Shown here one piece after another: positions 5,354 to 35,921 of a stretch of 64,000 bases of DNA. Under the pieces are notes generated by a model that was not told the DNA's origin, ran no database searches, and saw only the letters and a program-made list of their open reading frames with translations. The first letter of the stretch is position 1; every line of letters begins with the position of its first letter. The stretch spans positions 1 to 64,000 of the IMG/VR virus record IMGVR_UViG_3300020473_001965; one strand, given 5' to 3'. A program made the translations under genes and the position numbers.

Positions 5354-5720
5354 TGGTGGACCCGGCGGGAGTCGAACCCGCGTCCGCAATAACTTCAAAG
5401 TCGAGTCATTCACAGGTTTGTCTAATTTATTCCCAAATTAGAAAGGTAGCTACAAAATTCCCTTTTCCTATGTAGCCTTGGAAAACCACCTGTTTCCAGG
5501 GTAACCATTCTGATTTTTTATTTTTGCAGGATCTCTACCTGTTATCTTAAGTTGGGTATCAAGGTCTTAAGAAACCCCGTCGAATTAAGCGGCTAAGCGC
5601 TGTTCGTAGTGATAATTGTTGTTGGCAATTAAAGTTTTGAAACCGCGTTTAAGGTCAGCTATTTCGTGCGACCACCTGCACTCTCATTCTCCACTACCCC
5701 GTCGAAGCCGTTTCGGGCCC
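5354..5720 (-). ncRNA. ssrA: tmRNA; tag (A)ANNNYHYEQRLAA at 5585-5626
   Basis: 5' GGGCCCG pairs with 3' CGGGUCC-ACCA with G3.U Ala determinant; T-loop GGUUCGACUCC; tag ORF ends LAA-stop. Confidence 0.95.
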
Positions 5721-5726
5721 AAATCT

Positions 5727-5918
5727 CTACTTTTTCTCAGCTGAGATCGTGGAACGAACTAAATTCGCAGCTCTTGTTTTGAGATCACGCAATCCACGTC
5801 GTGCACGAACTCCTGCAGATTTATTTCCACGGGCGTTTTTGTGAACATCTAGTTCAAGACTTTCAACGAGGACCTTGATCTCTTCCCACTGGTTAAGAAT
5901 GTTATCAGTTTCTGACAT
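5727..5918 (-). CDS. Histone H1-like (Hc1 family) small basic protein
   Basis: GNKSAGVRARRGL motif. Confidence 0.75.
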   Translation of the reverse strand: MSETDNILNQWEEIKVLVESLELDVHKNARGNKSAGVRARRGLRDLKTRAANLVRSTISAEKK

Positions 5919-5980
5919 TTTTTTACTCCTTTAACGTCTAAGTGACATTATTATATATGCACACACAAAAGATTTTATCA

Positions 5981-6226
5981 TTAATTATTGACAATCAGCG
6001 TGCTGCCTTTATTGATCTCTCCATCTGCCACGGCTTTGCAAGCATTAGAAAGATATTTCATATCCTTGATATTTTCAAGCTCCAAAGATAGTAGATAGAC
6101 TAGCTGAACAATTTGTTTTTGCGAGACGCCAAAATTTAAAATCTCTTGTACTATTTCTCGACATCTAGCGCGATCTCTGATGTCCATCTCATCATCTGTT
6201 TCACCGTAAGACGTTAAATCACTCAT
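5981..6226 (-). CDS. Hypothetical protein
   Basis: ORF in operon context, start at MSDLT after GAGG. Confidence 0.65.
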   Translation of the reverse strand: MSDLTSYGETDDEMDIRDRARCREIVQEILNFGVSQKQIVQLVYLLSLELENIKDMKYLSNACKAVADGEINKGSTLIVNN

Positions 6227-6695
6227 TTCTATCCTCAAATACTTCTTCTCTTGTAAAAGATTCAATTTTAACTTTTGTTGATCCCAACATATGAAGAACC
6301 TTACCTGTAACAGTACCTTTGAATTCCTCTTTTGTTAAAATAATGGGCGGGGCCTCTAAATTAGTCTCATAGTAAAACTGAACTTCTTCCCAAACAGGGA
6401 GGTCACATTCATATGTTTCCAAAATCTTTGAAAGATTTGCAGGAAGTGATAGCTTTATATCATTTTTAGTCATGACTGACATCGACGATTCGCGCCCTAC
6501 CACAATCTCAGACTTACAAAGATCATGAATTTTATGAACAACGCCACAATTGTTACAATGGCAGAATTTTTCAATCACTTTGTCTTCATCATCAACAACA
6601 GAAAAAACAACAAACTTATGAAAAAGTGGGTCCTTCATTTTTCTGTATTGAGGCAAAATACAGTGACATTGAATTAAATGTTTAAGTCCTCTCAT
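6219..6695 (-). CDS. Hypothetical protein, possible Zn-binding
   Basis: CHC and CNNC motifs; overlaps neighbours. Confidence 0.65.
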   Translation of the reverse strand: MRGLKHLIQCHCILPQYRKMKDPLFHKFVVFSVVDDEDKVIEKFCHCNNCGVVHKIHDLCKSEIVVGRESSMSVMTKNDIKLSLPANLSKILETYECDLPVWEEVQFYYETNLEAPPIILTKEEFKGTVTGKVLHMLGSTKVKIESFTREEVFEDRNE

Positions 6696-7183
6696 AATAA
6701 TCTTCTCATTTTTCTATTTATGGCTCTTCTTTCTTTTCTATTTACTCTCTCTAAAAAAGTAATTCCATCTAGGTGGTCTATTTCATGCTGAACACAAATA
6801 GCTTCTAAGTCTTTGAAGACTCTTGATTCTCGTTCTCCGTTGATGCTTAGATAACTAATTTGAACTGTACTGTACCTTTGAACAGCAACTTCCACACCGG
6901 GAAAGCTTAGGCATCCTTCTTTTTCATAAGACTCTCCTCGGCCTTCTCTGATTACTGGATTAATAAAGCATAAGGGCTCTTCTTGATCTTCTGAGCAGTC
7001 CATCACAAAGATCCTATTCAAATATCCTGCCTGATTTGCCGCTAAACCTACTCCCTTTGATTCGTACATCAAGTCTAACATTTTATCAATTTGAGCAATC
7101 ACCTTGTCGTCAATTTTTTCAACTTCTTTGCAAGGCGATGATAAGGACGGATCTGGGTATTTGAGTATTTTTTCACTTTTCAT
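6692..7183 (-). CDS. def: Peptide deformylase
   Basis: GVGLAANQ, EGCLS and HEIDH motifs. Confidence 0.95.
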   Translation of the reverse strand: MKSEKILKYPDPSLSSPCKEVEKIDDKVIAQIDKMLDLMYESKGVGLAANQAGYLNRIFVMDCSEDQEEPLCFINPVIREGRGESYEKEGCLSFPGVEVAVQRYSTVQISYLSINGERESRVFKDLEAICVQHEIDHLDGITFLERVNRKERRAINRKMRRLL

Positions 7184-7665
7184 TTTGAATGTTTGTCCGC
7201 CACAGCCGACGAAGCCCAAGAATCAGGTTTAGTTCTTATAGGGAACCCTGTGCTTTTAGCATAACCGGTGAGTTGTTCAGCGTATTTACCTGTTGCGCCT
7301 TTATCTGGAGAAGTGCTAATGTCTAGGTGTAGTTCTAAATTAGCCTCTGGGCACGTTTCTGATATCATCAAGGTGGTATTTACTGTTTTTGTCACTTCTT
7401 CTAGCATTCTTGTAACAAGCAGCCTAAAAGGGCCCACAGGCACTCTGTCTCTTTTAAGAAAATACCTTCCACCTTGTTGATTTTCTGCACCATGAAGACA
7501 AACCGCAGTTACAAAAACGCATATGTCTTTTGTCATAAAACTATCAGTACCTATAAAAATTCGCCCCTTGTCTTTTGTGTGTGCCCTTAATTCTACTATC
7601 AGGTCATCGATATCGATTGTATTTCCTTTTGGGTCAAACCAAAAATTACTTTTTAACAGGCTCAT
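7180..7665 (-). CDS. YkuK (DUF458) RNase H-like protein
   Basis: IFIGTDS, LHLDI and C-terminal AVADKHSK. Confidence 0.8.
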   Translation of the reverse strand: MSLLKSNFWFDPKGNTIDIDDLIVELRAHTKDKGRIFIGTDSFMTKDICVFVTAVCLHGAENQQGGRYFLKRDRVPVGPFRLLVTRMLEEVTKTVNTTLMISETCPEANLELHLDISTSPDKGATGKYAEQLTGYAKSTGFPIRTKPDSWASSAVADKHSK

Positions 7666-9022
7666 TTATTAAAGCTCCAGATGTATTTTTAATTAGAAGT
7701 GCACTGTTATGACAAACTCTCATACAATTAATAAAGCTACCAGCCGGAATCTTTTTTACTCTATTGAAAAACTTTTCTAATCCCTCTATTATAATAGGGT
7801 TTTCTTTTTTATCGTGTGCAGCAGCAAAGTCTTTTATTGAAAACATTCCAAAATCTCTAGCTATAGGGATTGTTCTAAAAGCAGCATCAATATTGATTTT
7901 AGTCTTTCTAATTTCACTATCAGACGTGTTTTTTGAAGGTGTAAAATGAATGCTTCTCCCACTCAGAGCCTTCATCCTGTATTGCATTGTCCTGTCAAAC
8001 AACTCTAAAGAGAAAGGGTCTAAGTTTTTTCTTTTTGCTTCAGCGTTCTTTTTAACTCTGTTTAAATGGTGGTGAATCTGTGCTGTTTTTGTATTGTTGA
8101 TAAAGATAATCTTACTAGGCTTTATTTCAACTCGATCAACCAGTTTAATTTCACTATAATCAATAGATGATATGAGATTCCCTTTCAAGTATGATACCGG
8201 GTCAGTGTCACAAACAACAGACATGTCAACAAAAGAGTTGATCGATTTTTCATCCTTTAATAGTTTTACAGGAAATATATTTAAAGCCTTTCTTTGCATG
8301 TTTACAAACAGTGTCTGTAAAACTTCATCTGCGTAACCTTGTGACACAATAACCATGGGATCTGTATTTTTAGATGCAAATTCTAATATGTGGTGTATCT
8401 CAGCTACGCTTTCAATGACACCATCAATAATTATCACTTTTGCAAAAGAATGATCCCAACTGTTACTCTTAATAAAAAATTCATTAAACGTCTCAACGTC
8501 AAAAGAAAACGCGTTTTTTATTTCAATAGTAGGATTTTCTATCTTTGAATCTTCAACAAAGAATTTACCAGACAAGCCTGTGGATACGAAAGCCTCTTCT
8601 AGTGCATGGCGTGTTATTTCACACCCAGACGCCTGGCTTACAAATTTTATAACTTCTTTTTTTCTCGTAGGAGAAACTATCTTTTCAATCATTTCAAATG
8701 ATGGGCATTTAATATCATCATTTGATGACTTAAGTAAGTTAATTGTGTACCATAATCCAAAATCAGAAAAAAAGGGTGCTTTATAAAAAAGCTCCAGGCT
8801 TTGTTGCGTCACAAAATCTATAATGGGTCGTGAAAGATTTTTCTCATATGTGAGACATTGAAACTTGTCTGATATGTTTGAAAGATAAAATATTTTATCG
8901 TCCGCATTCGAAAACAATGCGTTCCCTGTTTGAAATTGATTCAGCCTGGACCAAATTTCATCAATAGACTTTCTATATTCATCTTCATACAAGTCATTAG
9001 ACAGCACGTTTACAAAGCTCAT
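7646..9022 (-). CDS. Highly divergent GroEL/Cpn60-like protein
   Basis: Apical-domain-like IIDGVIESVAEIHHILE..PMVIVSQG..EVLQTLFVN..DMSVV; no GDGTT motif. Confidence 0.65.
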   Translation of the reverse strand: MSFVNVLSNDLYEDEYRKSIDEIWSRLNQFQTGNALFSNADDKIFYLSNISDKFQCLTYEKNLSRPIIDFVTQQSLELFYKAPFFSDFGLWYTINLLKSSNDDIKCPSFEMIEKIVSPTRKKEVIKFVSQASGCEITRHALEEAFVSTGLSGKFFVEDSKIENPTIEIKNAFSFDVETFNEFFIKSNSWDHSFAKVIIIDGVIESVAEIHHILEFASKNTDPMVIVSQGYADEVLQTLFVNMQRKALNIFPVKLLKDEKSINSFVDMSVVCDTDPVSYLKGNLISSIDYSEIKLVDRVEIKPSKIIFINNTKTAQIHHHLNRVKKNAEAKRKNLDPFSLELFDRTMQYRMKALSGRSIHFTPSKNTSDSEIRKTKINIDAAFRTIPIARDFGMFSIKDFAAAHDKKENPIIIEGLEKFFNRVKKIPAGSFINCMRVCHNSALLIKNTSGALINEPVKK

Positions 9023-9071
9023 AAGATACTATACCGCATTAAATGCCATGGTTAAAGTTATCGAAAAAAGC

Positions 9072-9353
9072 CTAATCGTCGTCTGATCTAGACTTGCCGA
9101 AACCTGAAAATGCTGACGCAAGTGAGTCAGTTGCATTTCTAAGTCGTTCTGCTTCACCCTGCTTGGCTTCGGCTATCTTTTCTTTCTCTGCGGCCGTTAC
9201 AGCAAATCTCATAATCGCTGAAGACACACCTAACGTAATTAAAGTTATGCCCAAAGTGCTCAAATCATATGCACCAGCAGCTGCCGTTCCACAAACAACT
9301 AAGACCTCAGGGAACTGAAATCTTATTCCATCATTTTTAATACCAAATCTCAT
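9072..9353 (-). CDS. Small membrane protein
   Basis: Two hydrophobic segments; AGGAG RBS. Confidence 0.6.
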   Translation of the reverse strand: MRFGIKNDGIRFQFPEVLVVCGTAAAGAYDLSTLGITLITLGVSSAIMRFAVTAAEKEKIAEAKQGEAERLRNATDSLASAFSGFGKSRSDDD

Positions 9354-9399
9354 CGTATACTCCTGTTTAAAAATACACGCTAGAGTCTAATTGTATAAA

Positions 9400-11331
9400 T
9401 CAAGAATCGCGCCAGAGGTTGTTGCTAGCATACGTTAGAATTTCTTCAGCTGACTCAGGTGTGTAACCGTATTCATCAATCATGGTCTGAACCATCTCAT
9501 TATACTTCTTCTGCTGATCATCATCCCTTGATTTGCTCTTTGTGACGACACGCGCAAGATCTTTAATAGAGGTCATGAGATATGATTCAATCGCTTCTTT
9601 TAGTGGCGCGTAACTTGTATAGTCGATTCGCTCTTTTCTTCTCATTTTAGCAAACATATACGCTGTAACGTCTGACCTAAAACCATCCCGAGCAGAACCT
9701 GTAATACCGATTGTCTCTTCTATTGCACGCATGAAGTTTTCATCAGGATCCATAGATTCTTTTGTAACTCGATTCTTCATGCTCTGCTTAGTTGTAAAAG
9801 CCTCAGCATTATCTAGATAAGTGTCAAATAGTGACTGTGCTTGCTCTTCGTAAGCAGTAACAAATGCTTTTGCAATTTCATTCTCAAGCATTTTTAAGTA
9901 CTCTTCTCTGATCACTTTTCTTAACAGTTCTAAGCAGTGTGCCCTGAATTCTGCATCGATTAACTGCTCGTTAACTTGTCTGATAAGTGAATTCATCACT
10001 GAGATGGGTGTGATCATTTCGTTTTCTGAATCACTCAAGGCATTGTCTACGGCTTTCATTATAAACCTTGTAGAAATACCATTCATTCCCTCGTCTCTTG
10101 ACTCATCTCTCAGATCTTTAATGTCTACCTTCTTGACCCTGCCCTTTTCAATTACGTCTTCGCCGTTATAGATCTTCATTTTCGTCATAGGATCGCACTT
10201 CTGGCTTGTGTGAAGCCTAGAAAGGACAGAGAACATTGAGGCAATTCTCAGTGTGTGAGGTGCAATGTGCGCATTAAAGTCAGATCTTGAAAGAATCTTT
10301 TCATAAATTTTAATTTCTTGATCAAGTTCTAAAACGTACGGAACGTTAATTTTTACTACGCGATCTAAGATAGCTTCGTTTGTATGTTCACTTTGAAATT
10401 TATTCCATTCAGCTTCGTTACAGTGAGCAACAATCACACCGTCGAAGTATATCATATCATGCTTCCCTGGAGATGGAACCCTCTTCTCCTGCGTCGCAGT
10501 GATTATTGTATGGAGAAACTCAATCTCATTTTTGAACACCTCAACTAGCTCTACAATCCCTCTGTTACCTACATTGAAAGCGCCATTAAGGGACAGTACT
10601 CGAGGATCATCTTCAGCATATTTGTCAAGCTTTGAAATGTCTTCTGACCCTATTAGAACAGAAACATCCTGACTGTTTGCATCCATGGGTGGGACTGAAG
10701 CTATTCCTCTTCTAGCCCTTTGAGAAAACGTTGTTTCTTTAACAACAAAATTTTCGTATTCGCGGCCGTACTCTTCAAACAGCAGGTGCCTGGCAACCGG
10801 TGATATGTCACCCTCTATTTTCACACCCAGCAATTCCTCAAACTGGCTTCGAAGCCCCCGGGGTATTAAGTGTAAAGGCTCACCCCTCTGAGGATCACCT
10901 TGTAAATAAAAGTATCTTTCACCATCTAATGCACGCTTAATATGTTCTGTAAGAGCCGACTTACCAGCACCAACTGGACCCATCAAGAGCAATACTTGTC
11001 GTGATTCCTCACCTCTTTTAGATGCAGAGTTTAGAAATCTCATAACCTTGGCAATAACTTTTTCCATCCCAAAAAATTCAGATTGAAAATAATCATATGT
11101 TTTCAATGATTCGCCACCAAATAGTTTGTGACATCTTTCATCATTCTCATTCATCGACTGGACGCCGTGCCCTTCTATTGCTTCTGTAAGACGCTTATGA
11201 GCTAATTTTGCGATAGACGGGTTTTTTCTTATAATCTCTAGATACTCAATAAAAGTACCTTCAAACTTATCATCAGTCTTCTTAGCTCTTTGCTCTTTGA
11301 TTATTTTTAAAAAATCTTTTGATGCAGCCAT
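9400..11331 (-). CDS. prkA: PrkA/YeaG AAA+ serine protein kinase
   Basis: EFFGME, Walker A GPVGAGKS, GNRGIVELVEVFK, NEAILDR, EGMNGISTRF. Confidence 0.93.
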   Translation of the reverse strand: MAASKDFLKIIKEQRAKKTDDKFEGTFIEYLEIIRKNPSIAKLAHKRLTEAIEGHGVQSMNENDERCHKLFGGESLKTYDYFQSEFFGMEKVIAKVMRFLNSASKRGEESRQVLLLMGPVGAGKSALTEHIKRALDGERYFYLQGDPQRGEPLHLIPRGLRSQFEELLGVKIEGDISPVARHLLFEEYGREYENFVVKETTFSQRARRGIASVPPMDANSQDVSVLIGSEDISKLDKYAEDDPRVLSLNGAFNVGNRGIVELVEVFKNEIEFLHTIITATQEKRVPSPGKHDMIYFDGVIVAHCNEAEWNKFQSEHTNEAILDRVVKINVPYVLELDQEIKIYEKILSRSDFNAHIAPHTLRIASMFSVLSRLHTSQKCDPMTKMKIYNGEDVIEKGRVKKVDIKDLRDESRDEGMNGISTRFIMKAVDNALSDSENEMITPISVMNSLIRQVNEQLIDAEFRAHCLELLRKVIREEYLKMLENEIAKAFVTAYEEQAQSLFDTYLDNAEAFTTKQSMKNRVTKESMDPDENFMRAIEETIGITGSARDGFRSDVTAYMFAKMRRKERIDYTSYAPLKEAIESYLMTSIKDLARVVTKSKSRDDDQQKKYNEMVQTMIDEYGYTPESAEEILTYASNNLWRDS

Positions 11332-11376
11332 TATTACCTCTCAATTTTATTATATTGGGTGCGTTTTAATTATAAA

Positions 11377-12684
11377 TTAAATTTCCCAAGGTTCCTCTTC
11401 AATTATCGTATTTAACTTTACGACATCTTCCCAAAGCTCTGATATGCTCTTAACTACGTTTTCTGCATATGAAAGCTCTAGATCTCTTCCGTCGTGATCA
11501 TGATAAAGGACAAGAACGTTTCCTGCCTCTATTTCCGAAACACCGATCACCGGGATACTGTTTACTCCCGTATTTCTTATCATGTCTTCTCTAATTGGTT
11601 CCCATCCATCTTCATCAGAAATTTCATCGATAGTGTATGCGTTTTTCTTGGGGGAGTAACTAAACAAATTCAAGTCTTCAAAATCTTGACGATTCATTAA
11701 TGCTCTAATTGCAGCTACGTCATGGAATACTTCTCGAACAAAAAAGCATTCATCTATTCCTCTTTCTTTTTCTAATCTTTGAAAGAGGTGGAAGCCGACA
11801 TGATATGGGTTAATACCACCCACATGCGGTCTTACTACTTGATTGTGTGTTTTTAGAAAAGGTATGTGAATGTCTTGAGGTACTTCGAGTTCGTGCATAA
11901 TCTTATAATGCCAGAAACTAGCCCAACCTTCATTCAGTATTTTTGTTTTGATTTGAGGAATAAAATATAGAGATTCTGTTCGAACGATATCAATCAAATC
12001 TCTTTCCCAATCAGAGAGATGTGTACCATGTTCTACAATAAACCCTAGTAAATCGACGTCATAAGAAAGCGGGATTTTTTCTATGTCTACATTCTTGTAT
12101 TCACCCTTTTCATCGAATCTTATTTTTTCTGTTAATTCATTTTTGATTGTATCGTGAGGAATTCTTTCCTGACCGTCTCTGTACGTTTGAAATCTAATGG
12201 TGTGAGCAGCATCTAAAATCTTTTCAACCTTTTCGATACCGATGCTGGGATCTTCGATATAACCCTGTATTCTATTTCTAGCATTTCTAAACCTAGAAAT
12301 AACAGTTTCGGGTCGAGTATCTTTAAATTGAGGATTATTTTTAAAGAAATCACTATGACCCACACAGTGTGCCATAATCAACACCTGCATAAATAGTGGG
12401 TTTTCTCTCATCAAGTATGCTATTGATGGGTTGGAATTGATAATCAACTCGTACGGTAGGCCTTCGAGACCCATGTTATACATTTGATGGGTTCTTTCAA
12501 ACGATTTGCCGTAAGACCAGTGACCGTAATGAGACGGTAGACCATGATAAGACATGTGCCCAATCATTTCGTAGTAGTCACATATCTCATAATTGATGGG
12601 AAACCAGTCTAGATTATAATCCCTTGACATGTCAATAATACGACTATCCCAGTTTTCTAAGTCTGATATTTTCCAATCACTCAT
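11377..12684 (-). CDS. spoVR: SpoVR/YcgB family protein
   Basis: HWSYGK, YELIINSNP, AHCVGHSDFFKNN, TKILNEGWASFWH, NPYHVG. Confidence 0.93.
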   Translation of the reverse strand: MSDWKISDLENWDSRIIDMSRDYNLDWFPINYEICDYYEMIGHMSYHGLPSHYGHWSYGKSFERTHQMYNMGLEGLPYELIINSNPSIAYLMRENPLFMQVLIMAHCVGHSDFFKNNPQFKDTRPETVISRFRNARNRIQGYIEDPSIGIEKVEKILDAAHTIRFQTYRDGQERIPHDTIKNELTEKIRFDEKGEYKNVDIEKIPLSYDVDLLGFIVEHGTHLSDWERDLIDIVRTESLYFIPQIKTKILNEGWASFWHYKIMHELEVPQDIHIPFLKTHNQVVRPHVGGINPYHVGFHLFQRLEKERGIDECFFVREVFHDVAAIRALMNRQDFEDLNLFSYSPKKNAYTIDEISDEDGWEPIREDMIRNTGVNSIPVIGVSEIEAGNVLVLYHDHDGRDLELSYAENVVKSISELWEDVVKLNTIIEEEPWEI

Positions 12685-13855
12685 CTATCTTTCCTCCAAA
12701 TATTCTTGAAAAAGCCGGCCAGATGTCATCTTTTGAAGTGAGCATAATATTTTTAAACTTTTTGTCGACCATGTGCTCATATTCTTTAGACATAAGGGAC
12801 TGCTCAAACCGACTCCACTTTGGCTCTTCTTCATGCGGCAAGATTTCAATAAAACAATATAGCTGTGCCAGGTTTTTGATCTTGAGTGACTCATTAATAG
12901 CCCTAGGGTTGTCTTCAGGCCAATTATCACCATCTGAGCAGTGGAATGCGTAAATATTCCATGAATCAGGATGATAGCGCTTAGATATTATTTCATTTGC
13001 AAGCTTGGGCGCGGATGAAATGTAAGTACCTCCGGAGGTCATGACTTTAAAAAAGTCATCTTCATTTACTTCTTTTGCTTTAGTTGTATGAGCGAGAAAG
13101 ACAATTTCTGTATTTTCATACCGATGGTTGATAAACTGATATAATAGGAAAAAGAATGATCTTGCTATAAACTTTTTCTTTTGTGTCATCGAGCCTGACA
13201 CGTCCATCATGAAGAATATTACAGCATTTGAATTTTCACGGGGTGTAGGTTTAATATAGTGATACTTTAAATCATTTTGATGAAATGGAAATCTTTCCTC
13301 TTCTTCTGGGTCATAGTCACCTGTTCTCTGCGCTGCTTTTTTTCTTCTAATTTTGTTCTTAAGTGTTTCTTTCTTTGAAAGTCTTGGCCTAATCCCTTCT
13401 GATCGATAGCCCTTTCTCCTGAGCTTTTCTCCCATGATGTTCTTCATCTGCTTCTTTTCAAGCTCAGGAAGGTTCAGGTCGTCAAACAGGTAAGCCGCTA
13501 ATTCTTCGAGAGATATTTCTACTTCGTAGATTTCTTCGCCCTCTTCATTGCCTGCCTTGTTACCTGGCTTTTTTTCTTTGCCCTTCTTTTGAATGGATTG
13601 CCCACGAGTGATGTCTGCACCAGGTGCGCTACCTACTTTTCTATTTTTAGAATTTTCACCATATATGAATCTATACTCTTTGATACCTCTGACTGGTATC
13701 TTGATCTTCTTCTTGCCATCTTTTCCAATAATAGACTCATCTGAAACGATATCATGAATACCTTCCTTGATGGCTCTTTCTATCTTTTTCTTGTGTCTAG
13801 ATCTGTCACTAGCTGAACGATCTGAGTGTGTTTTATGATGTTTAAAAATGGACAT
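12677..13855 (-). CDS. yeaH: YeaH/YhbH (DUF444) VWA-containing protein
   Basis: DRSRH, MMDVSGSM MIDAS, SGGT, WNIYAFHCSDGDNW. Confidence 0.92.
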   Translation of the reverse strand: MSIFKHHKTHSDRSASDRSRHKKKIERAIKEGIHDIVSDESIIGKDGKKKIKIPVRGIKEYRFIYGENSKNRKVGSAPGADITRGQSIQKKGKEKKPGNKAGNEEGEEIYEVEISLEELAAYLFDDLNLPELEKKQMKNIMGEKLRRKGYRSEGIRPRLSKKETLKNKIRRKKAAQRTGDYDPEEEERFPFHQNDLKYHYIKPTPRENSNAVIFFMMDVSGSMTQKKKFIARSFFFLLYQFINHRYENTEIVFLAHTTKAKEVNEDDFFKVMTSGGTYISSAPKLANEIISKRYHPDSWNIYAFHCSDGDNWPEDNPRAINESLKIKNLAQLYCFIEILPHEEEPKWSRFEQSLMSKEYEHMVDKKFKNIMLTSKDDIWPAFSRIFGGKIDE

Positions 13856-13864
13856 AATAAAATT

Positions 13865-14452
13865 CTATTCCAATATTGAGTTTTGTATCAGCTCATGAAT
13901 ATAGGCTTCACTGTAACCCCTTAGTGTAGATTTTATCACCATATTCTTGTCAATAAACATAAATGTGGGCCATGACTCCACTGGTGGGCCCGAAATACCA
14001 TTTGGATCCAGCATTTCTCGATCACCACCCAGGACGAAATGGTCGTCCAATCCGTACGTGTCAGACCATAATTGTAAGTCTGCTAAATCTACGGGCTGAC
14101 CTGACAGATCATCAATTAAAATTGTGATAAATTCTAGGTCTTCTTCTGCATATTGGTCAGATATTGATTGTATAGATCCAGCAGTAACTCGACAATAACC
14201 GCACCACATTGTACTAAAGTCTAGAACAATAGGTTTTCCAATGTGATCATAGAGTTCAAAATCTTCTCCATGTTGGTCTGTTAGCTGCAAATTACACATG
14301 TGTTCTTCCTGGGTGTAACCGCAGTCGTCCCAAGTAACAAGGCTTTCAGGTTCAGATGGTGAAGAATCTTTTGAGTTGGATCCGCATGATTCGCCGCAGC
14401 CAACAAGAAAAATTGAAAAGAAAAGTGCTTTTAAGCTGAGATTTGATAACAT
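13865..14452 (-). CDS. TlpA-like thioredoxin-fold lipoprotein
   Basis: LVGC lipobox; WCGYC; cis-Pro WPT. Confidence 0.85.
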   Translation of the reverse strand: MLSNLSLKALFFSIFLVGCGESCGSNSKDSSPSEPESLVTWDDCGYTQEEHMCNLQLTDQHGEDFELYDHIGKPIVLDFSTMWCGYCRVTAGSIQSISDQYAEEDLEFITILIDDLSGQPVDLADLQLWSDTYGLDDHFVLGGDREMLDPNGISGPPVESWPTFMFIDKNMVIKSTLRGYSEAYIHELIQNSILE

Positions 14453-14486
14453 AATACATCCCTCTTATAATATATAGGATGTTTTC

Positions 14487-14831
14487 CTAGACCTTGAACT
14501 TTCTCCAAGCAAATCTTTTTCTTTTCGCCAGGTAGTTTACATCTACATCATGGTCGTAAGCCTCTTGTTCAAACCTAATTCTATAGTAAGCTGTTTCCTT
14601 GTTTCTATATTTTATTAAACCGTGCAGCCAGTCCCACACATAGAGGACATAAAAACCCACGACTAAAAGTTCACTGTACTGTTTGATGTGTATCGACTCA
14701 TGGTTTATAGTTCTGTCATTCCCTTCATCTCTAATAAAGATAAAGGGCCAAAGAGTGATTGCATATGCATTAATAACCCAGCTCAAAGCCTTAGGCACCC
14801 AACTATTTTTTACTATAATGGGTATTTTCAT
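14487..14831 (-). CDS. HExxH-containing protein (DUF4157-like)
   Basis: AITLWPFI..HESIHIKQ..FEQEAY. Confidence 0.7.
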   Translation of the reverse strand: MKIPIIVKNSWVPKALSWVINAYAITLWPFIFIRDEGNDRTINHESIHIKQYSELLVVGFYVLYVWDWLHGLIKYRNKETAYYRIRFEQEAYDHDVDVNYLAKRKRFAWRKFKV

Positions 14832-15823
14832 GCTTGATCTCCTGAAATTTTTAAATGGGCCCACTCAATTGCAGGTTTTAAATGAGCGTGACATTTTGAG
14901 AGCATAGTGTCATAATCGACCCAATCCCAACCATGATGTTCATACTCTCCAGTCTCTGGGTTCTTTTTAATTTTCGGTGTTTGTGAAGTTTCAGCTATCC
15001 AACATCTTGTCTTTGGTGTATCAAAAGAATCTTCACCCCACCTAAAATCCAGAACGGTAATGTTTGCCTCCTCTTCCACTTCGCGAAGAGCTGTTTCAAA
15101 ATGGCTACCATGATCGTCTGTATCCATCCTGCCTTTCGGGATATCATACTTTCCATAAATTTTAAGACCTAAAAATAGGCCTTTTTCATTGATAACTATG
15201 ATCCCTGCACCTTGTGGGCTTTCAAAAAGGTATTGAAGTGACTCATTTACCCCCTCTTTAGCAATTTTTAAAATCATGTCTAAGTGACGTTGATCAATTC
15301 CGGGTGGCGTACCGCCATGAAAGTCCAAAAGTATATTGATTGCATTTTTATATTTATTCTTCTGTTTTTCAGAAGGTGAGGAAGAAATATTGTGAAGCAT
15401 ATCTGCTAGCTTCACTCTTAGTGCTGTACCAGAAAGGCTTGTCACGTACTGCGAATAGTCAACATTTTTATCATGTGTTAAAGAACGAACGACATCAATT
15501 ACTTCATTTTTGACCTGTTCGTTTTCGATACTTTGACCAATCCTATCTAAGACTTCTTCTTCAGACTTAAATACACCCCCTTTTTCATAATCTTCTAAAG
15601 CATCATGTAGTAGTGCAGCTAGCTGGCCTATTTTATCTGACGGATAGAATCTCCTCATTATGTTTCTAACAGCCTTTGGGTGCTCATAATAAGGTTCGCC
15701 AGATCTTCTACGTTGATCTCTGTGTACCTCTTCACCTGCTCGATAGGTATCTGCATAGGTATCAGAAGTAATAACCTCAGAAATGTATTCTCTAATTAAT
15801 CTTGACATGTTTTTGCTGACCAC
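14828..15823 (-). CDS. HD-domain (RelA/SpoT/Mesh1-type) hydrolase fused to a Nudix hydrolase
   Basis: HRDQRRRSGEPYYEHP, AALLHDALED, VKLADMLHN; Nudix box PKG..TALREVEEEAN. Confidence 0.88.
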   Translation of the reverse strand: MVSKNMSRLIREYISEVITSDTYADTYRAGEEVHRDQRRRSGEPYYEHPKAVRNIMRRFYPSDKIGQLAALLHDALEDYEKGGVFKSEEEVLDRIGQSIENEQVKNEVIDVVRSLTHDKNVDYSQYVTSLSGTALRVKLADMLHNISSSPSEKQKNKYKNAINILLDFHGGTPPGIDQRHLDMILKIAKEGVNESLQYLFESPQGAGIIVINEKGLFLGLKIYGKYDIPKGRMDTDDHGSHFETALREVEEEANITVLDFRWGEDSFDTPKTRCWIAETSQTPKIKKNPETGEYEHHGWDWVDYDTMLSKCHAHLKPAIEWAHLKISGDQA

Positions 15824-15858
15824 CAGGAATAAGTATTATCTGAAGAGGATTTTTTAAT

Positions 15859-17514
15859 ATGGCAACAAGAACAAGAAACTTTGGTGCAGGTGTTGTAAAA
15901 ATTAACGAAGGGCTAATAATTTCGGGTTCTGATCCACAAGTATACGTCAGTGGAAACATCAACATAGACTCGCTCACAGAACCTCGCATTCAATTTCAAA
16001 TAGGCGGTGAAGACAGAGCCAAGATTCTTGTCAATACGTCGAACAACCTGGTTTTCCACAATCAATTTGTCAATAAACACATTGTTTTTAAGGCGAATGA
16101 TCAAGGTGTCACCCGAGAGGGTTTTCGTATCGATGGGGCAGTACCTGAAGTTGTTGTCAATCAGGGTTCAGAATCAATGATTGATTTTCGTGTAGAATCA
16201 AACAACAATACACACATGCTTTTCGTGGATGGGGGAAATGAAAAAGTAGGTATTGGAACAGCTTCTCCCTCCACCACATTTCATGCATATGCTAATGTAT
16301 CCAATGCGTACGTAGCCACAATTGACAATGACCAAGCCTCAGCAGGACATGTTCTAAAGCTTCTAACAGACGGAAACGGATCTGGAACACGAATACTAGA
16401 AATGGAAGACGGCGACGGCGATGTTATTTTCCGGGCCCGCGCCGATGGTCGGTTTGGCTTTGGGCCCGACGGTGTCAGCAGTATGGGCGCCGGCACTTTC
16501 GTAGTGGGTATTGATAATTCTTCTCATACAGCTGACATAGCGATATCGAAAAGACTTCAGCATCTCGGAGACTCAAACACGTATCTAGACTTCCCTTCAG
16601 CCGATACCTTCAACCTTGTAGCAGGCGGCAATTCTTTCCTTAAATACGATAGTGGAAATATTCTACTAAACAATGCAAATGCAGATGTTGACACAAAGAT
16701 TATGGCTGATAATGGCGCTGTAGTGCTACATGTTGATGCTGGAACGAACAGGGTTGGTGTTGGTACGACTGGGCCCGATCGGGCGCTAGATGTGCTAGAT
16801 TCATCAAACCCGCAGATGAGATTGTCACACACAGACGGATCAAATTATGTTGATTTTCAAGCTAGTGCAGCTGGTGATCTAATTCTGACAGGATCGGCTT
16901 CAAACGCAACATACATCTTTACATCAGCTGGAAATGCAAAGATCAACGTACAATCAAATGCAGGGGACGGCGATGCCGAAGTAGGATTTAGTGTCGATGC
17001 AGGAGCAAATATTGCGTGGTCGTTAGGTGTTGACGATGGCGACTCAGATAAGTTTAAAATAGGTGGATCAACAATTGGAGCAAATACTCGCCTTACAATT
17101 GACTCTAACGGTCATGTAGGAGTAGGCACTACTAATCCAGCTAGCACGCTCTCAGTGGCAGGATCAATAGCAGTAAACGTTACATACTTTGGTCAAGCGA
17201 ATGATCCAGGAACAACGTACACAATGAATGCTACAGATTGTGTTGTTATCGCCAATACACGACCAACAGCACAGGGTGGTATCGATAGCGCAATAACGAT
17301 AACACTTCCAGATGCATCTGACTTCCCTGGACGCATTGTCACAATCAAGGATGGCGCAGGCTATAGTGATGTAAATGCTATCAATATTAACGCAGCATCA
17401 GGCGACAATCTAGACGGAAACCCATCAACTACTACTACGAATCTACCTACTCCAGCAAGCTTTAAGACACTAGTATCTGACGGTGTCAATAGCTGGTATG
17501 AGATAGGTAGCTAG
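15859..17514 (+). CDS. Tail-fibre-like virion structural protein
   Basis: Repeated (K/R/H)VG(I/V)GT beta units, Gly/Ser/Asn-rich, C-terminal ITLPDA..GRIVTIKD..SDGVNSW module. Confidence 0.7.
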   Translation: MATRTRNFGAGVVKINEGLIISGSDPQVYVSGNINIDSLTEPRIQFQIGGEDRAKILVNTSNNLVFHNQFVNKHIVFKANDQGVTREGFRIDGAVPEVVVNQGSESMIDFRVESNNNTHMLFVDGGNEKVGIGTASPSTTFHAYANVSNAYVATIDNDQASAGHVLKLLTDGNGSGTRILEMEDGDGDVIFRARADGRFGFGPDGVSSMGAGTFVVGIDNSSHTADIAISKRLQHLGDSNTYLDFPSADTFNLVAGGNSFLKYDSGNILLNNANADVDTKIMADNGAVVLHVDAGTNRVGVGTTGPDRALDVLDSSNPQMRLSHTDGSNYVDFQASAAGDLILTGSASNATYIFTSAGNAKINVQSNAGDGDAEVGFSVDAGANIAWSLGVDDGDSDKFKIGGSTIGANTRLTIDSNGHVGVGTTNPASTLSVAGSIAVNVTYFGQANDPGTTYTMNATDCVVIANTRPTAQGGIDSAITITLPDASDFPGRIVTIKDGAGYSDVNAININAASGDNLDGNPSTTTTNLPTPASFKTLVSDGVNSWYEIGS

Positions 17515-17885
17515 AATTCTTCATCGTGATTTGAAGAAAATGGGAACTTTACTACATTCTCTGGAAGTATAACATCGTCTTCTGCTTCTGATTTGTCGAT
17601 TGCTTCGAGCAATATACCGTTTTTAATCAATTCTTTTTTCGAACATGTTCCAGGTGCCAGTTCTATTCCAGAATTGTCATACAAGTAAATTATTTCTTTT
17701 CCAGGAGTACCGACATGAGCAATTCTTACAATTCCTGTGCCAGGCAATAACCATAGTTGTCCGGGTAATACAGGAAAAAGTTCATTTTTTTGATAACTCT
17801 TTATGACAACTGTCATACCTAAAATCAACCCTATAAAACTAGATCCTAGTATTAGCATTGACAAAGTGATGGGTTCTATATTCAT
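17511..17885 (-). CDS. Hypothetical membrane protein
   Basis: N-terminal TM helix. Confidence 0.6.
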   Translation of the reverse strand: MNIEPITLSMLILGSSFIGLILGMTVVIKSYQKNELFPVLPGQLWLLPGTGIVRIAHVGTPGKEIIYLYDNSGIELAPGTCSKKELIKNGILLEAIDKSEAEDDVILPENVVKFPFSSNHDEEF

Positions 17886-17895
17886 TTTAAAGTTA

Positions 17896-17971
17896 TGGAG
17901 CCACTGATAGGGTTCGAACCTACGACCTGCTGATTACAAATCAGCTGCTCTACCAACTGAGCTACAGTGGC
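17896..17971 (-). tRNA. tRNA-Thr(UGU)
   Basis: Complete cloverleaf, anticodon loop TTTGTAA, encoded CCA. Confidence 0.95.
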
Positions 17972-17976
17972 AATTA

Positions 17977-18438
17977 TTAAATTATTTTCAATACTTCCCA
18001 TGATGATTCGCGAGTGGGAGTTATTACTTCAAATCCGTCACCCGGGGCCAGTCCCAACATGGCTTTTCCGAAAGGTGAGACGTAACTTATCTCACCCTGC
18101 GAAGGGTCTGATTCATGAATACCTACAATAGTAATTGTTTTAATTTCATCTGTATCTAAATTTTGAACCTCTGCAGACCTACCAAAAGATACAACATCAC
18201 TAGACATGTCGGGTGCTGTAATAGAAGAAGTATCGATAATTTCTTTAAGATCATCTATAGACTTTTCAACTTTTGATCTTTCATTAATAGCAGTAGCATA
18301 TTTTGAGTCTTCTCTAAAGTCACCATCACCCATCGCATCAGCGACTTCTTTTTGAGCTGCCTTTAATTTCTTATTTAAGTTTTCAAACTTTTGTATAAGC
18401 TTTTTATAGCCACCACTTGTTATAAGGTGTCTATTCAT
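17977..18438 (-). CDS. greA: Transcription elongation factor GreA/GreB
   Basis: GDFREDSKY and ISYVSPFGKAMLG motifs. Confidence 0.88.
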   Translation of the reverse strand: MNRHLITSGGYKKLIQKFENLNKKLKAAQKEVADAMGDGDFREDSKYATAINERSKVEKSIDDLKEIIDTSSITAPDMSSDVVSFGRSAEVQNLDTDEIKTITIVGIHESDPSQGEISYVSPFGKAMLGLAPGDGFEVITPTRESSWEVLKII

Positions 18439-18796
18439 TTGTCTGTTCCCCCTCTTTTGCCTTGTAATAGAAAATAGTAAATCTACCATCCGAACATACT
18501 AGAGGTAGATTATCGTCAAATAGTTGATCAGCAAACATTGTAGGTATTACTAGAAATTCTGAATCGTTCCAAAAACTATCTGTTTCGCTGTAATCTTTTT
18601 TGCAAGAAACCAAAATACCTCCTGTTCCTACTTCCATATTGGGGGAAGAACAAAAGTCTTTGTCCATGTTTACTAGAAGGGCATCTAAGCACATACTAGA
18701 CGTGTGTATAAAATCTTTGCCTGCATATTCTATAATGTTTTGCTTAATGCAACCAGTCGCGAAAACTAACGATAGTGAAAATAAAATTGATCTCAT
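18431..18796 (-). CDS. Hypothetical lipoprotein
   Basis: ATGC lipobox. Confidence 0.6.
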   Translation of the reverse strand: MRSILFSLSLVFATGCIKQNIIEYAGKDFIHTSSMCLDALLVNMDKDFCSSPNMEVGTGGILVSCKKDYSETDSFWNDSEFLVIPTMFADQLFDDNLPLVCSDGRFTIFYYKAKEGEQTNE

Positions 18797-18824
18797 GCAT
18801 TATTATAGTATGTAAACTAGAAAT

Positions 18825-19250
18825 TTATAAGTCTTTTTGCCTCTCTACTAATTCGCTACTACTTTGGATTTTTTGACCACCTAAATTCCAAACAAGTTCT
18901 ATGCCTAATTGATCACAGAGGGCAACTTCAGGTGTGTTGTTGTTTTTTCTGTCCCCTCCGTTTCCGAAGTAGTCAATGTCCATGGTATTTTTAAGATCAG
19001 CAATGGATTCACAAACAGAGTCGTCGTCATCCTTACCTTGGATTACAGCAACGACCCCCTTGAATGCAGATAAAATTTCAGCTCTTTCAGACCATGGCAT
19101 AAAAATATACCCCTTTTTTCTTTGAAGCCAATCATCTGAATTTGCGATAATTACTACGTCCCCAACATCAGCGGCCGATTGAATCATTCTTACATGTCCT
19201 ACGTGAACCGGGTCGAACCCTCCACTTAATGCGATCTTTTTATTTTTCAT
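18825..19250 (-). CDS. Cytidylyltransferase-like (HxGH) nucleotidyltransferase
   Basis: GGFDPVHVGH, NGGDR, KIQSSS. Confidence 0.88.
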   Translation of the reverse strand: MKNKKIALSGGFDPVHVGHVRMIQSAADVGDVVIIANSDDWLQRKKGYIFMPWSERAEILSAFKGVVAVIQGKDDDDSVCESIADLKNTMDIDYFGNGGDRKNNNTPEVALCDQLGIELVWNLGGQKIQSSSELVERQKDL

Positions 19251-19295
19251 AAGTCACCACGAATAATAGTTACTATATGATGCAAGGAATCTATT

Positions 19296-35834: not shown

Positions 35835-35921
35835 TGGTAGGACAGGCGGGACTCGAACCCGCATGCTCATTCGAGCGAGAGATTTTAAGTCTCTTGTGTC
35901 TACCGATTCCACCACTGTCCC
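35835..35921 (-). tRNA. tRNA-Leu(UAA)
   Basis: Cloverleaf with long variable arm, loop CTTAAAA, CCA. Confidence 0.95.

What the first reader, a model, noticed from the sequence alone, without database searches (positions are those of the whole stretch)
9400..13855. Complete yeaH-spoVR-prkA stress/sporulation triad on a phage, in rearranged order
Seen: all three genes intact and co-directional, transcribed yeaH, spoVR, prkA. Known: bacterial loci are typically prkA(yeaG)-yeaH-spoVR and are tied to nitrogen starvation, stationary phase and sporulation. Inference: the phage manipulates host dormancy or development, together with the adjacent alarmone hydrolase.
Basis: partly seen in the sequence, partly recalled or inferred. 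Interest (0 to 1): 0.6.

Follow-up and report, generated by a model that had tools for sequence, protein, structure and literature searches.

The report
Phage-borne PrkA stress module, permuted
A large marine phage, like many of its relatives, carries an intact, reordered and long-conserved copy of the bacterial three-gene PrkA/YeaH/SpoVR starvation module; it probably lets the phage switch on starvation-type protein turnover in its host, and a role in spore formation is unlikely.

Summary
Three intact minus-strand genes lie at exactly the stated coordinates: DUF444/YeaH-YhbH (13855..12677), SpoVR (12684..11377) and PrkA (11331..9400). They sit on a 235.7-kb viral record that also has a T4-like capsid protein, portal, terminase and DNA polymerase.

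The gene order is a real, clade-wide permutation. PrkA is last in the window and in all 30 other phage-clade loci that hold all three genes. PrkA is first in all 73 bacterial loci, among the closest homologues, that hold all three genes.

In each of the three protein trees the phage copies form one branch (support 100, 92 and 95). Synonymous sites are saturated, dN/dS is about 0.03-0.06, and the motifs checked are kept. This is an old, vertically inherited phage module, not a recent capture or a decaying passenger.

- The phage is marine planktonic, so sporulation is unlikely.
- The SpoT-like HD domain is not adjacent and is shared only with the nearest relative; the recurring neighbour is a NUDIX hydrolase.
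- The genes lie in an island of protein-handling functions (tmRNA, deformylase, GroEL-like, DnaJ, trypsin-like protease).

My best inference is phage-driven, starvation-type bulk protein turnover, as shown for E. coli YeaG in 2026. This is untested here.

The triad already exists in Thermus and Ralstonia phage records, but I found no paper discussing it as a phage module.

The parts
12677..13855 (-). DUF444 (YeaH/YhbH-type) protein, 392 aa, transcribed first. The C-terminal half is a vWA domain with a complete MIDAS set: D218-x-S220-x-S222, T277, D308.
   Evidence: ORF. PF04285 E 1.4e-112. TIGR02877 spore_yhbH scores 404.6 bits, below its 467.95 cut-off. phrog_19072. The MIDAS residues are invariant in 29 phage and bacterial sequences.
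11377..12684 (-). SpoVR-family protein, 435 aa, transcribed second. Invariant H106-x3-H110, the N251-E252-G-W-A255 motif, H259 and H280. Residues 1-342 are modelled as a zincin-like, mostly helical domain.
   Evidence: ORF. PF04293 E 1.3e-112. Invariant columns. AlphaFold models have pLDDT 83. In both wide structure searches the best 50 rows are essentially all zincin-type metallohydrolases or their known homologues (a few are uncharacterised structural-genomics entries), Z 10.5 to 5.4. Foldseek found nothing.
9400..11331 (-). PrkA-family AAA+ ATPase, 643 aa, transcribed last. Walker A is GPVGAGKS at 118-125. The C-terminal PrkA domain is present.
   Evidence: ORF. PF08298 E 9e-136 and PF06798 E 5e-79. 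Walker A is invariant. A solved homologue exists: 9xip 'Serine protein kinase', E 4e-145. Weak Lon-type AAA+ similarity.
12677..12684 (-). 8-nt overlap of the DUF444 stop with the SpoVR start (ATGAGTGA), preceded by GGAGG. This suggests translational coupling.
   Evidence: Sequence read; coordinates.
11332..11376 (-). 45-nt spacer between SpoVR and PrkA. It holds a sigma-70-like match (TTTATA, 16 nt, TATAAT) and a GAGAGG ribosome-binding site. It may be an internal promoter for PrkA.
   Evidence: Promoter-like sites in the region are only about 2 sd above shuffles, so this is weak evidence.
9300..9325 (-). Terminator-like hairpin (11 pairs) about 75 nt after the PrkA stop, inside a 93-aa ORF of unknown function. 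It may mark the end of the transcription unit.
   Evidence: The terminator count is not above shuffles, so this is weak evidence.
14828..15823 (-). Accessory neighbour: a RelA/SpoT-type HD hydrolase domain (residues about 27-164) fused to a NUDIX domain (about 195-320). Only the NUDIX half recurs beside the triad in relatives.
   Evidence: PF13328 HD_4 and PF00293 NUDIX. TIGR00691 spoT_relA E 4e-13. Motifs EHP, LLHDALED and KLADMLHN are seen. NUDIX lies upstream of DUF444 in 9 related loci and in L211.
13865..14452 (-). Thioredoxin/AhpC-like protein directly upstream of DUF444 (9-nt gap). It is shared only with the nearest relative.
   Evidence: No match in the IMG/VR relatives.

Best explanation
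What it is (shown). This is a phage-adapted copy of the bacterial PrkA / YeaH(YhbH) / SpoVR(YcgB) stress module. Its three parts are an AAA+ ATPase, a vWA protein with a complete metal-binding (MIDAS) site, and a SpoVR protein whose modelled fold resembles zinc metallohydrolases.

The module belongs to the PrkA/YhbH sub-type found in Bacillota and several other phyla, not the enterobacterial YeaG sub-type. It was taken up long ago and then circularly permuted so that PrkA comes last. Since then it has been passed down vertically, as one block, in a diverse clade of marine T4-like jumbo phages with genomes of about 190-300 kb.

How it most likely works (inferred). The phage expresses the three proteins together during infection, so they escape the host's starvation controls (RpoS, NtrC, ppGpp in model bacteria). 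The three proteins act as one machine: PrkA supplies ATP-driven remodelling or unfolding, the vWA protein acts as adaptor, and SpoVR is the candidate hydrolytic part. This machine switches on the starvation-type, largely non-specific turnover of cytoplasmic host protein that E. coli YeaG is required for. The turnover frees amino acids and energy for phage protein synthesis in nutrient-poor planktonic hosts.

The neighbouring genes (tmRNA, peptide deformylase, GroEL-like, DnaJ, trypsin-like protease, NUDIX with or without a SpoT-like HD domain) would serve the same programme of protein recycling and renewed translation.
For: Identity and integrity.

Genuine phage:
- Viral hallmark genes.
- Capsid gene and PrkA on one contig in four relatives, about 90 kb apart in three of them.
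- Flanking genes on both sides are shared with phage relatives and with none of the bacterial loci.

Old, vertical, selected:
- More than 120 metagenome proteins at 75-91% identity.
- 31 IMG/VR loci at 63-82% PrkA identity; all 29 that reach DUF444 have the same order.
- One phage branch in each tree (PrkA 100, DUF444 92, SpoVR 95), with the same sub-clades in all three.
- PrkA identity falls together with capsid identity (76/67, 72/66, 65/51 %).
- Synonymous sites are saturated; omega is 0.03-0.06 in the closest pairs.

Permutation: PrkA first in 73 of 73 bacterial loci holding all three genes.

The three proteins work together:
- Conserved cofitness of yeaG, yeaH and ycgB in six bacteria (bioRxiv 10.1101/072470).
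- Start/stop overlap of two of the genes here.

Protein turnover:
- E. coli YeaG (SpdA) is required for starvation-induced, largely non-specific degradation of cytoplasmic protein that supplies amino acids and ATP (PMC13684143).
- B. subtilis PrkA was reported as a Lon-like ATP-dependent protease (PMC9512850).
- The SpoVR models match essentially only zincin-type metallohydrolases, with an invariant H-x3-H and NEGWA motif.

Context: an island of protein-handling genes around the triad, conserved in the nearest relative.
Against: - No expression or host data. Three metatranscriptomes of the source sample gave no real coverage.
- The PNAS paper shows a requirement for YeaG only. It does not mention YeaH or YcgB. 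It concerns the YeaG sub-type, which is about 30-33% identical to this PrkA.
- Purified B. anthracis PrkA had no detectable protease or kinase activity. The authors suggest the B. subtilis activity may have come from a contaminant (PMC13001217).
- The SpoVR H-x3-H motif lacks the catalytic Glu of HExxH (V or C instead). The Z scores (about 10) lie in the range that helical models can reach by chance (notes). Foldseek found no match.
- The E. coli degradation flux is only a few percent per hour (PMC13684143). That may be slow relative to an infection cycle.
- In Thermus phages the triad lies next to portal and terminase genes. This hints at another role.
- The triad is not shown to be universal in the clade: one 187-kb relative lacks it within 105 kb of its capsid gene.
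Confidence: 0.4

Rival explanations
1. Host-state signalling. The triad acts as a regulatory switch rather than a degradative machine. The phage uses it, with NUDIX/HD nucleotide hydrolases, to hold the host out of dormancy or stationary phase, or to push it into that state, so that infection can finish.
For: - PrkA/YeaG deletions change stress survival, sporulation gene expression and regrowth lag (PMC13001217, PMC9512850, PMC13684143).
- Price et al. proposed a conserved signalling pathway from the cofitness data (10.1101/072470).
- A SpoT-type HD + NUDIX gene lies 1 kb upstream, and NUDIX recurs beside the triad.
- GreA/GreB is nearby.
Against: - Kinase activity was not confirmed for B. subtilis or B. 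anthracis PrkA (PMC9512850, PMC13001217).
- The HD domain is not conserved with the triad.
- No regulator or DNA-binding partner is seen in the conserved block.
- The surrounding genes concern protein handling more than signalling.
Confidence: 0.25
2. Phage-internal role. The AAA+/vWA/zincin-like set remodels or processes the phage's own proteins, for example in head assembly, maturation or quality control of a very large virion.
For: - In Thermus phage Lalka8 the triad lies between portal/minor head protein and the large terminase. In phiYS40 it lies a few genes from the terminase.
- Both Thermus phages share the PrkA-last order.
- GroEL-like and DnaJ genes flank the triad here.
Against: - In the marine clade the triad lies about 90 kb from the capsid gene, among non-structural genes.
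- The proteins stay 55-58% (PrkA) identical to cellular ones and keep all the family's invariant residues. That fits an unchanged cellular-type activity.
- RsoM2USA and three huge phages carry an ordinary YeaG-type operon in the bacterial order, away from any obvious structural genes.
Confidence: 0.15
3. Inter-phage or defence-related function, such as superinfection exclusion, counter-defence, or a toxic abortive module. Other AAA+/vWA pairs are found in conflict systems.
For: - AAA+ plus vWA pairs occur in defence islands (general knowledge).
- A weak DolB match for the PrkA P-loop region, E 2e-5.
Against: - No PADLOC family matches DUF444 or SpoVR, and the single PrkA match covers only the P-loop region.
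- Strict vertical inheritance and slow evolution are unlike typical conflict genes.
Confidence: 0.08
4. Recent host capture, host contamination at the contig end, or a decaying passenger with no function.
For: - The triad lies only 9-14 kb from the left end of a linear, incomplete record.
- Related contigs are labelled as bacterial or archaeal MAGs in public records.
Against: - The triad is internal in complete relatives, on the same contig as the capsid gene.
- The phage-only branch is well separated from all 78 bacterial loci fetched (at most 58% identity).
- All three genes are intact and under purifying selection.
- Both flanks are shared with phage relatives only.
Confidence: 0.02

Closest known systems
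Bacterial prkA-yhbH-spoVR operons of the PrkA/YhbH sub-type (Clostridia and other Bacillota, Binatia, Thermodesulfobacteriota, Acidobacteriota and others)
   Same: - The same three families with full-length domain coverage.
- PrkA 54-58%, DUF444 40-49% and SpoVR 39-49% identical.
- The same Walker A, MIDAS and SpoVR invariant residues.
- Tightly packed, co-directional genes.
   Different: - Gene order: PrkA is first in all 73 bacterial loci holding all three genes, and last in the phage clade.
- All three phage proteins score below NCBIfam's equivalog cut-offs.
- The module is carried on a virus, so it is expressed from phage signals rather than host starvation signals (inference).
E. coli YeaG (SpdA)-YeaH and YcgB
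   Same: - The same three families.
- The three genes share phenotypes across bacteria (10.1101/072470).
- YeaG is needed for starvation-induced bulk protein degradation (PMC13684143). I propose this as the activity the phage exploits.
   Different: - A different sub-type, only about 30-33% identical in PrkA.
- Split into two operons in E. coli.
- Under RpoS/NtrC control.
Thermus phages phiYS40, TMA, YS40_Isch, phiLo, Lalka8/27, MN1
   Same: Phage-borne DUF444, SpoVR-like and PrkA genes in the same PrkA-last order. They have been annotated since 2006 as 'SpoVR' and 'serine kinase'.
   Different: - Very divergent (about 30% in PrkA, long branches).
- An extra 616-aa gene sits between SpoVR and PrkA in phiYS40.
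- The triad lies beside portal and terminase genes.
- One common origin with the marine clade is neither supported nor firmly rejected (AU p 0.068).
Ralstonia jumbo phage RsoM2USA and huge phages LR756502, LR756504, LR745206
   Same: Jumbo or huge phages carrying PrkA-family operon genes: all three genes are seen in RsoM2USA and LR745206. RsoM2USA ORF28 and ORF30 were listed in its genome paper without comment on a module (PMC8504454).
   Different: - YeaG sub-type in the bacterial order (PrkA first), so a separate acquisition.
- Spacing is looser in LR756504, where the SpoVR match is partial; no SpoVR match was found within the fetched LR756502 locus.
MoxR/RavA-type AAA+ ATPases with vWA partners, including DUF2201 (metallopeptidase-like + vWA) proteins
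   Same: The same domain logic: an AAA+ ATPase, a vWA/MIDAS domain and a zincin-like domain. One such pair lies on this same phage at 41562-44045.
   Different: - No detectable sequence relationship to SpoVR, and only a weak vWA similarity.
- A different AAA+ clade.
- This is an analogy only.

Membership tests
PrkA / YeaH(YhbH) / SpoVR(YcgB) three-gene module | A PrkA protein with an N-terminal AAA_PrkA domain and the C-terminal PrkA domain. | tested here: met
   PF08298 E 9e-136 (profile positions 2-357 of 358) and PF06798 E 5e-79 (1-255 of 255).
PrkA / YeaH(YhbH) / SpoVR(YcgB) three-gene module | An intact Walker A lysine. B. subtilis K108 is essential for ATP binding and for function in sporulation (PMC9512850). 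| tested here: met
   GPVGAGKS at 118-125; G118, P119, V120, G121, G123, K124 and S125 are invariant in 29 sequences.
PrkA / YeaH(YhbH) / SpoVR(YcgB) three-gene module | A DUF444 protein with a vWA-type MIDAS motif. | tested here: met
   PF04285 E 1.4e-112. D218, S220, S222, T277 and D308 are invariant.
PrkA / YeaH(YhbH) / SpoVR(YcgB) three-gene module | A SpoVR-family protein. | tested here: met
   PF04293 E 1.3e-112. The SpoVR_C tail scores 24 bits, just below its 27.6 cut-off. 60 columns are invariant with bacterial members.
PrkA / YeaH(YhbH) / SpoVR(YcgB) three-gene module | The canonical operon order, PrkA then DUF444 then SpoVR. | tested here: not met
   The order here is DUF444, SpoVR, PrkA. 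It is canonical in 73 of 73 bacterial loci holding all three genes. This is a variant of the arrangement; all three components are present.
PrkA / YeaH(YhbH) / SpoVR(YcgB) three-gene module | Scores above NCBIfam's equivalog cut-offs (spore_yhbH, PRK11767 SpoVR, PRK15455 PrkA). | tested here: not met
   404.6 against 467.95; 244.3 against 679; 390.6 against 576. The phage proteins are family members but not equivalogs of the curated cellular groups.
PrkA / YeaH(YhbH) / SpoVR(YcgB) three-gene module | A role in the starvation or stationary-phase response, or in sporulation. | not testable with these tools
   Only metatranscriptome contigs were available, and they gave no coverage.
Phage auxiliary (host-derived) gene maintained by selection | Located inside a bona fide phage genome, with phage genes on both sides. 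| tested here: met
Phage auxiliary (host-derived) gene maintained by selection | Forms a phage-specific clade under purifying selection, not scattered recent captures. | tested here: met
   Trees. pN about 0.2-0.3 against saturated pS about 0.83, and omega 0.03-0.06.
Zincin (HExxH) metallopeptidases, considered for SpoVR | A zincin-like fold. | tested here: inconclusive
   In two wide searches the best 50 rows are essentially all zincin-type metallohydrolases or their known homologues, Z 10.5-5.4, with about 175-205 aligned residues. Foldseek found no match, and such Z values can arise for helical models.
Zincin (HExxH) metallopeptidases, considered for SpoVR | An HExxH motif with the catalytic Glu, plus a third metal ligand. 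| tested here: not met
   The motif is H106-(V/C)-x-G-H110 with no Glu at the second position. A gluzincin-like NEGWA with invariant E252 lies about 140 residues later. I therefore do not file SpoVR as a zincin peptidase; it remains a lead.

The most novel reading that the evidence does not exclude
The triad is a self-contained, three-part, ATP-driven protein-degrading machine. PrkA is the unfoldase, the vWA protein is the adaptor, and SpoVR is the so-far unrecognised metallohydrolase part. A widespread clade of marine jumbo phages carries its own copy to liquidate the host proteome into amino acids and energy. This would be a protein-level counterpart of phage-driven host DNA recycling. It would also be a route to solving the biochemistry of the PrkA/YeaG system in bacteria.
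Probability: 0.25. Interest if true: 0.85.

Novelty: new variant of a known kind. Interest (0 to 1): 0.58.

Why it matters
The PrkA/YeaG-YeaH-SpoVR module is one of the most widespread bacterial gene sets whose function is still poorly understood. In 2026 YeaG was linked to a global starvation-induced protein degradation programme.

A large, globally distributed group of marine phages has kept its own reordered copy intact, with synonymous sites saturated between members. That says the activity pays off during infection, most plausibly by feeding phage production in nutrient-starved cells.

If this is right, it adds a new class of phage auxiliary function: recycling of host protein. It bears on how viruses redirect nitrogen and carbon in the ocean. 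It also offers compact, co-evolved phage versions of the three proteins for biochemical reconstitution.

If instead the module serves phage assembly, that would be a new job for the family. Either way the question can be tested in cultured phages that carry the triad.

Tried and rejected
- DNA-level search of the triad against 50,697 phage records: no match.
- PADLOC defence models: nothing for DUF444 or SpoVR, and only a weak P-loop match for PrkA.
- Foldseek of the SpoVR model against the PDB: no match at E 0.001 or better.
- Sequence profiles of SpoVR and DUF444 against the PDB: nothing.
- hhalign of the SpoVR profile against the phage's own DUF2201 metallopeptidase-like protein: nothing. 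The vWA parts gave only E 0.01.
- Promoter and terminator scan: counts are close to shuffled expectation, so operon limits are only suggested.
- The T4 late-promoter motif TATAAATA is depleted on the coding strand (1 against 12.7 expected). A k-mer search of upstream gaps gave only ribosome-binding sites and generic AT-rich -10-like words. No temporal class could be assigned.
- Expression: three metatranscriptomes from the source sample gave only two short pieces less than 90% alike. This is no evidence either way.
- Classical dN/dS across the clade: not computable because synonymous sites are saturated in all 91 pairs. Only the closest pairs gave values.
- Prevalence in the clade from a capsid-based sample: 14 of 15 contigs are 16-62% fragments, so the result is inconclusive.
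- Common origin of the PrkA-last order in marine and Thermus phages: AU p 0.068, undecided, and the group was named after I had seen the tree.
- The paper on the temporal class of the phiYS40 genes is not held, and its table in another paper's supplement was truncated.
- One mistyped family scan.
- The large representative protein search was not used, since the families were already clear.

Full report
**1. Observation**

One search lists three minus-strand ORFs whose limits match the finding exactly:
- 12677-13855 (392 aa)
- 11377-12684 (435 aa)
- 9400-11331 (643 aa)

Pfam assigns them as follows:
- DUF444, E 1.4e-112.
- SpoVR, E 1.3e-112.
- PrkA: AAA_PrkA E 9e-136 plus the PrkA C-terminal domain E 5e-79.

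Coverage of each profile is essentially full-length. NCBIfam agrees on the families, but all three score below its equivalog cut-offs. The DUF444 protein fits the Bacillota-type spore_yhbH model best (404.6 bits against a cut-off of 467.95).

Transcription order is DUF444, SpoVR, PrkA. DUF444 and SpoVR overlap by 8 nt, with start and stop inside ATGAGTGA behind a GGAGG. SpoVR and PrkA are 45 nt apart.

**2. It is a phage, and the locus is not a contaminated contig end**

The window is the first 64 kb of a 235,672-bp IMG/VR virus record that CheckV rates 87% complete. Elsewhere the record encodes a T4-type major head protein, a portal, a large terminase and a DNA polymerase.

The capsid protein is most like those of a huge phage, Microcystis phage Mel-JY01 and Flavobacterium phage immuto, at 35-46% identity.

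In three near-complete relatives (284 kb, 281 kb, 190 kb), and in a 305,838-bp contig filed under a 'Methylococcaceae TMED69' MAG, the capsid gene and PrkA lie on the same contig. They are about 90 kb apart in three of the four.

Genes on both flanks of the triad are shared with phage relatives and with none of the bacterial loci.

An independent 2024 marine run yields an 8-kb contig covering 9050-13366 with 33 differences. The DNA occurs in marine plankton runs of five studies.

**3. The order is a clade-wide permutation**

A word search found more than 120 metagenome proteins 75-91% identical to this PrkA, many of them from Tara or other marine sources, on contigs up to 292 kb.

IMG/VR gave 31 loci with PrkA 63-82% identical. 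All 29 that reach DUF444 read DUF444-SpoVR-PrkA with tight spacing; the other two are cut at the contig end and begin SpoVR-PrkA.

A profile scan of one genome per prokaryote species gave 80 loci:
- The mis-binned phage contig (73% identical), which has the phage order and phage neighbours.
- One 1.4-kb fragment.
- 78 bacterial loci at only 54-58% identity (Clostridium and other Bacillota, Binatia, Thermodesulfobacteriota, Acidobacteriota and others).

All 73 bacterial loci that hold all three genes read PrkA-DUF444-SpoVR. It marks the phage clade rather than being a local accident.

**4. Phage clade or recent capture**

I built maximum-likelihood trees with 18 phage-clade rows, 28 bacterial rows and a YeaG-type outgroup. 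The phage rows fall on one branch in each tree:
- PrkA, SH-aLRT 100.
- DUF444, 92.
- SpoVR, 95.

The same inner groups recur in all three trees.

PrkA places the phage branch beside Bacillota. The other two proteins place it outside all sampled PrkA-type bacteria. The donor is therefore unresolved.

PrkA identity declines together with capsid identity (76/67, 72/66 and 65/51 %).

Synonymous sites are saturated in all 91 pairs (pS about 0.83), while pN is 0.2-0.3. The closest pairs give omega of 0.03-0.06.

The motifs checked are kept:
- Walker A GPVGAGKS.
- The MIDAS set D218/S220/S222/T277/D308.
- 60 invariant SpoVR columns.

It is not met.

**5. Other phages**

The triad is not new to phage records. 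PHROGs holds a family for each protein, and tblastn finds PrkA in 17 phage records.
- Thermus phage phiYS40 and its kin have DUF444-SpoVR-(616-aa gene)-PrkA. Thermus phage Lalka8 has portal, minor head protein, vWA, SpoVR-like, PrkA, then the terminase a few genes on.
- Ralstonia phage RsoM2USA and three huge phages carry YeaG-type genes in the bacterial order; all three genes are seen in RsoM2USA and LR745206, the SpoVR match is partial in LR756504, and none was found within the fetched LR756502 locus.

There were therefore at least two, and probably three, acquisitions.

Whether the marine and Thermus PrkA-last orders share an origin is undecided (AU p 0.068).

The literature searches found only annotation-table mentions (PMC8504454). 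No paper treats the triad as a phage module. The library does not hold most subscription journals.

**6. What the proteins do**

Established elsewhere:
- yeaG, yeaH and ycgB show strong conserved cofitness in six bacteria, so they act together (bioRxiv 10.1101/072470).
- B. subtilis PrkA binds and hydrolyses ATP through its Walker A motif. It was reported as a weak Lon-like ATP-dependent protease and not a kinase (PMC9512850).
- Purified B. anthracis PrkA had no protease or kinase activity and was classed as a clade III AAA+ ATPase (PMC13001217).
- E. coli YeaG (renamed SpdA) is required for a starvation-induced, largely non-specific degradation of cytoplasmic proteins that supplies amino acids and ATP (PMC13684143).

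Found here:
- A PrkA homologue has a solved structure, 9xip. SpoVR and DUF444 have none.
- AlphaFold models of SpoVR, both whole and as residues 1-342, reach pLDDT 83.
- In two Foldseek-independent searches the best 50 rows were essentially all zincin-type metallohydrolases or their known homologues: M1 aminopeptidases, LTA4 hydrolase, M3, M32, thermolysin, DUF885, YbeY and the M1-like domain of TFIID TAF2, plus a few uncharacterised structural-genomics entries. Z ran from 10.5 to 5.4.
- SpoVR has an invariant H106-x3-H110 on a long helix. About 140 residues later it has an invariant NEGWA, like the Glu-helix motif of gluzincins (that comparison is from my own knowledge). The catalytic Glu of HExxH is absent.

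I treat a hydrolytic role for SpoVR as a lead, not a result.

**7. Context**

The triad lies in an island of about 16 kb containing protein-handling and translation genes:

| Feature | Coordinates |
|---|---|
| tmRNA (Rfam 111.7 bits) | 5354-5720 |
| Peptide deformylase | 6692-7219 |
| RNaseH-like protein | 7180-7665 |
| GroEL-like protein | 7646-9022 |
| The triad | 9400-13855 |
| Thioredoxin-like protein | 13865-14452 |
| SpoT-type HD + NUDIX fusion | 14828-15823 |
| GreA/GreB | 17977-18489 |
| Trypsin-like protease | 19296-20096 |
| Full DnaJ | 20330-21361 |

The nearest relative, filed as a 'bacterium' MAG with PrkA 85% identical, has the same island.

Across the wider clade the recurring neighbours are a NUDIX hydrolase just upstream and a GroEL-like gene downstream. 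The HD domain is not one of them.

**8. Interpretation**

The identity and evolutionary history are well supported. The mechanism is inferred.

I favour a phage-driven, starvation-type protein turnover that feeds phage synthesis in nutrient-poor hosts (confidence about 0.4).

The rivals are:
- a signalling role in dormancy control (0.25);
- a phage-internal assembly role, suggested by the Thermus phage synteny (0.15);
- a conflict function (0.08);
- capture or contamination (0.02).

Sporulation is unlikely as the target. The habitat is marine plankton, and the family is widespread in bacteria that do not form spores.

**9. Limits**

- Expression, host and biochemistry are untested.
- The bacterial sample is the 80 best matches, so deeper donors are not sampled.
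- The trees used the quick search.
- Prevalence within the phage clade is unresolved.

Noticed in passing
window 5354-5720 (-): A phage-encoded tmRNA (ARAGORN; Rfam RF00023, 111.7 bits) with tag peptide ANNNYHYEQRLAA. It lies 4 kb downstream of the triad. tmRNA tags mark stalled proteins for proteolysis, which fits the protein-turnover theme and could help identify the host.
   Followed up: partly
window 5354-21361: An island of protein-handling and translation genes surrounds the triad: tmRNA, peptide deformylase (6692-7219), RNaseH-like (7180-7665), GroEL-like (7646-9022), thioredoxin-like (13865-14452), HD+NUDIX (14828-15823), tRNA-Thr (17896-17971), GreA/GreB (17977-18489), cytidylyltransferase-like (18825-19250), trypsin-like protease (19296-20096, + strand) and DnaJ (20330-21361). 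The same set occurs in the nearest relative, L210.
   Followed up: partly
window 41562-44045 (-): A second AAA+/vWA/metallopeptidase-like set on the same phage: a MoxR-type AAA_5 ATPase (43017-44045) followed by a DUF2201 protein with a putative metallopeptidase domain and a vWA-like domain (41562-42905). It has the same domain logic as the PrkA triad but no detectable homology to SpoVR.
   Followed up: partly
window about 25000-48000: G+C rises from 37-41% to 50-60% (peak at 42-46 kb) and then falls back to about 43%. Long ORFs are few, and ORFs overlap on both strands. A tRNA cluster (Leu, Met, Lys, Arg) lies at 35835-36890, and a KaiC/RecA-like ATPase at 37596-38345. The cause is not determined: a foreign insert, a distinct module or an assembly chimera are all possible.
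   Followed up: no
L044 (NHDW01000006.1, 305,838 bp); L210 (GCA_028255805.1, 94,876 bp); L211 (GCA_002688965.1, 12,564 bp): Public MAG contigs labelled Methylococcaceae bacterium, 'bacterium' and 'archaeon' carry the phage-order triad with phage neighbours. The first also has the T4-like capsid gene on the same contig. They look like jumbo-phage genomes or fragments binned into cellular MAGs. The Methylococcaceae-labelled bin has no other PrkA homologue.
   Followed up: partly
L002 (Thermus phage YS40_Isch) 1683-7809; L128 (Thermus phage Lalka8) 3639-7854: Thermus phages share the PrkA-last order. The triad lies next to portal, minor head and terminase genes. phiYS40-type phages have an extra 616-aa gene with no Pfam match between SpoVR and PrkA.
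   Followed up: partly
G000 whole record (minus strand): Nearly all genes are on one strand. Upstream gaps are enriched in AAGGAG-type ribosome-binding sites and AT-rich -10-like words. The T4 late-promoter motif TATAAATA is depleted (1 against 12.7 expected). Strong Shine-Dalgarno use argues weakly against a Bacteroidota host.
   Followed up: no
L210 16243-17269; L211 12165-12362: Relatives encode small Hc1 (histone H1-like, PF07432) proteins a few kb downstream of the triad.
   Followed up: no
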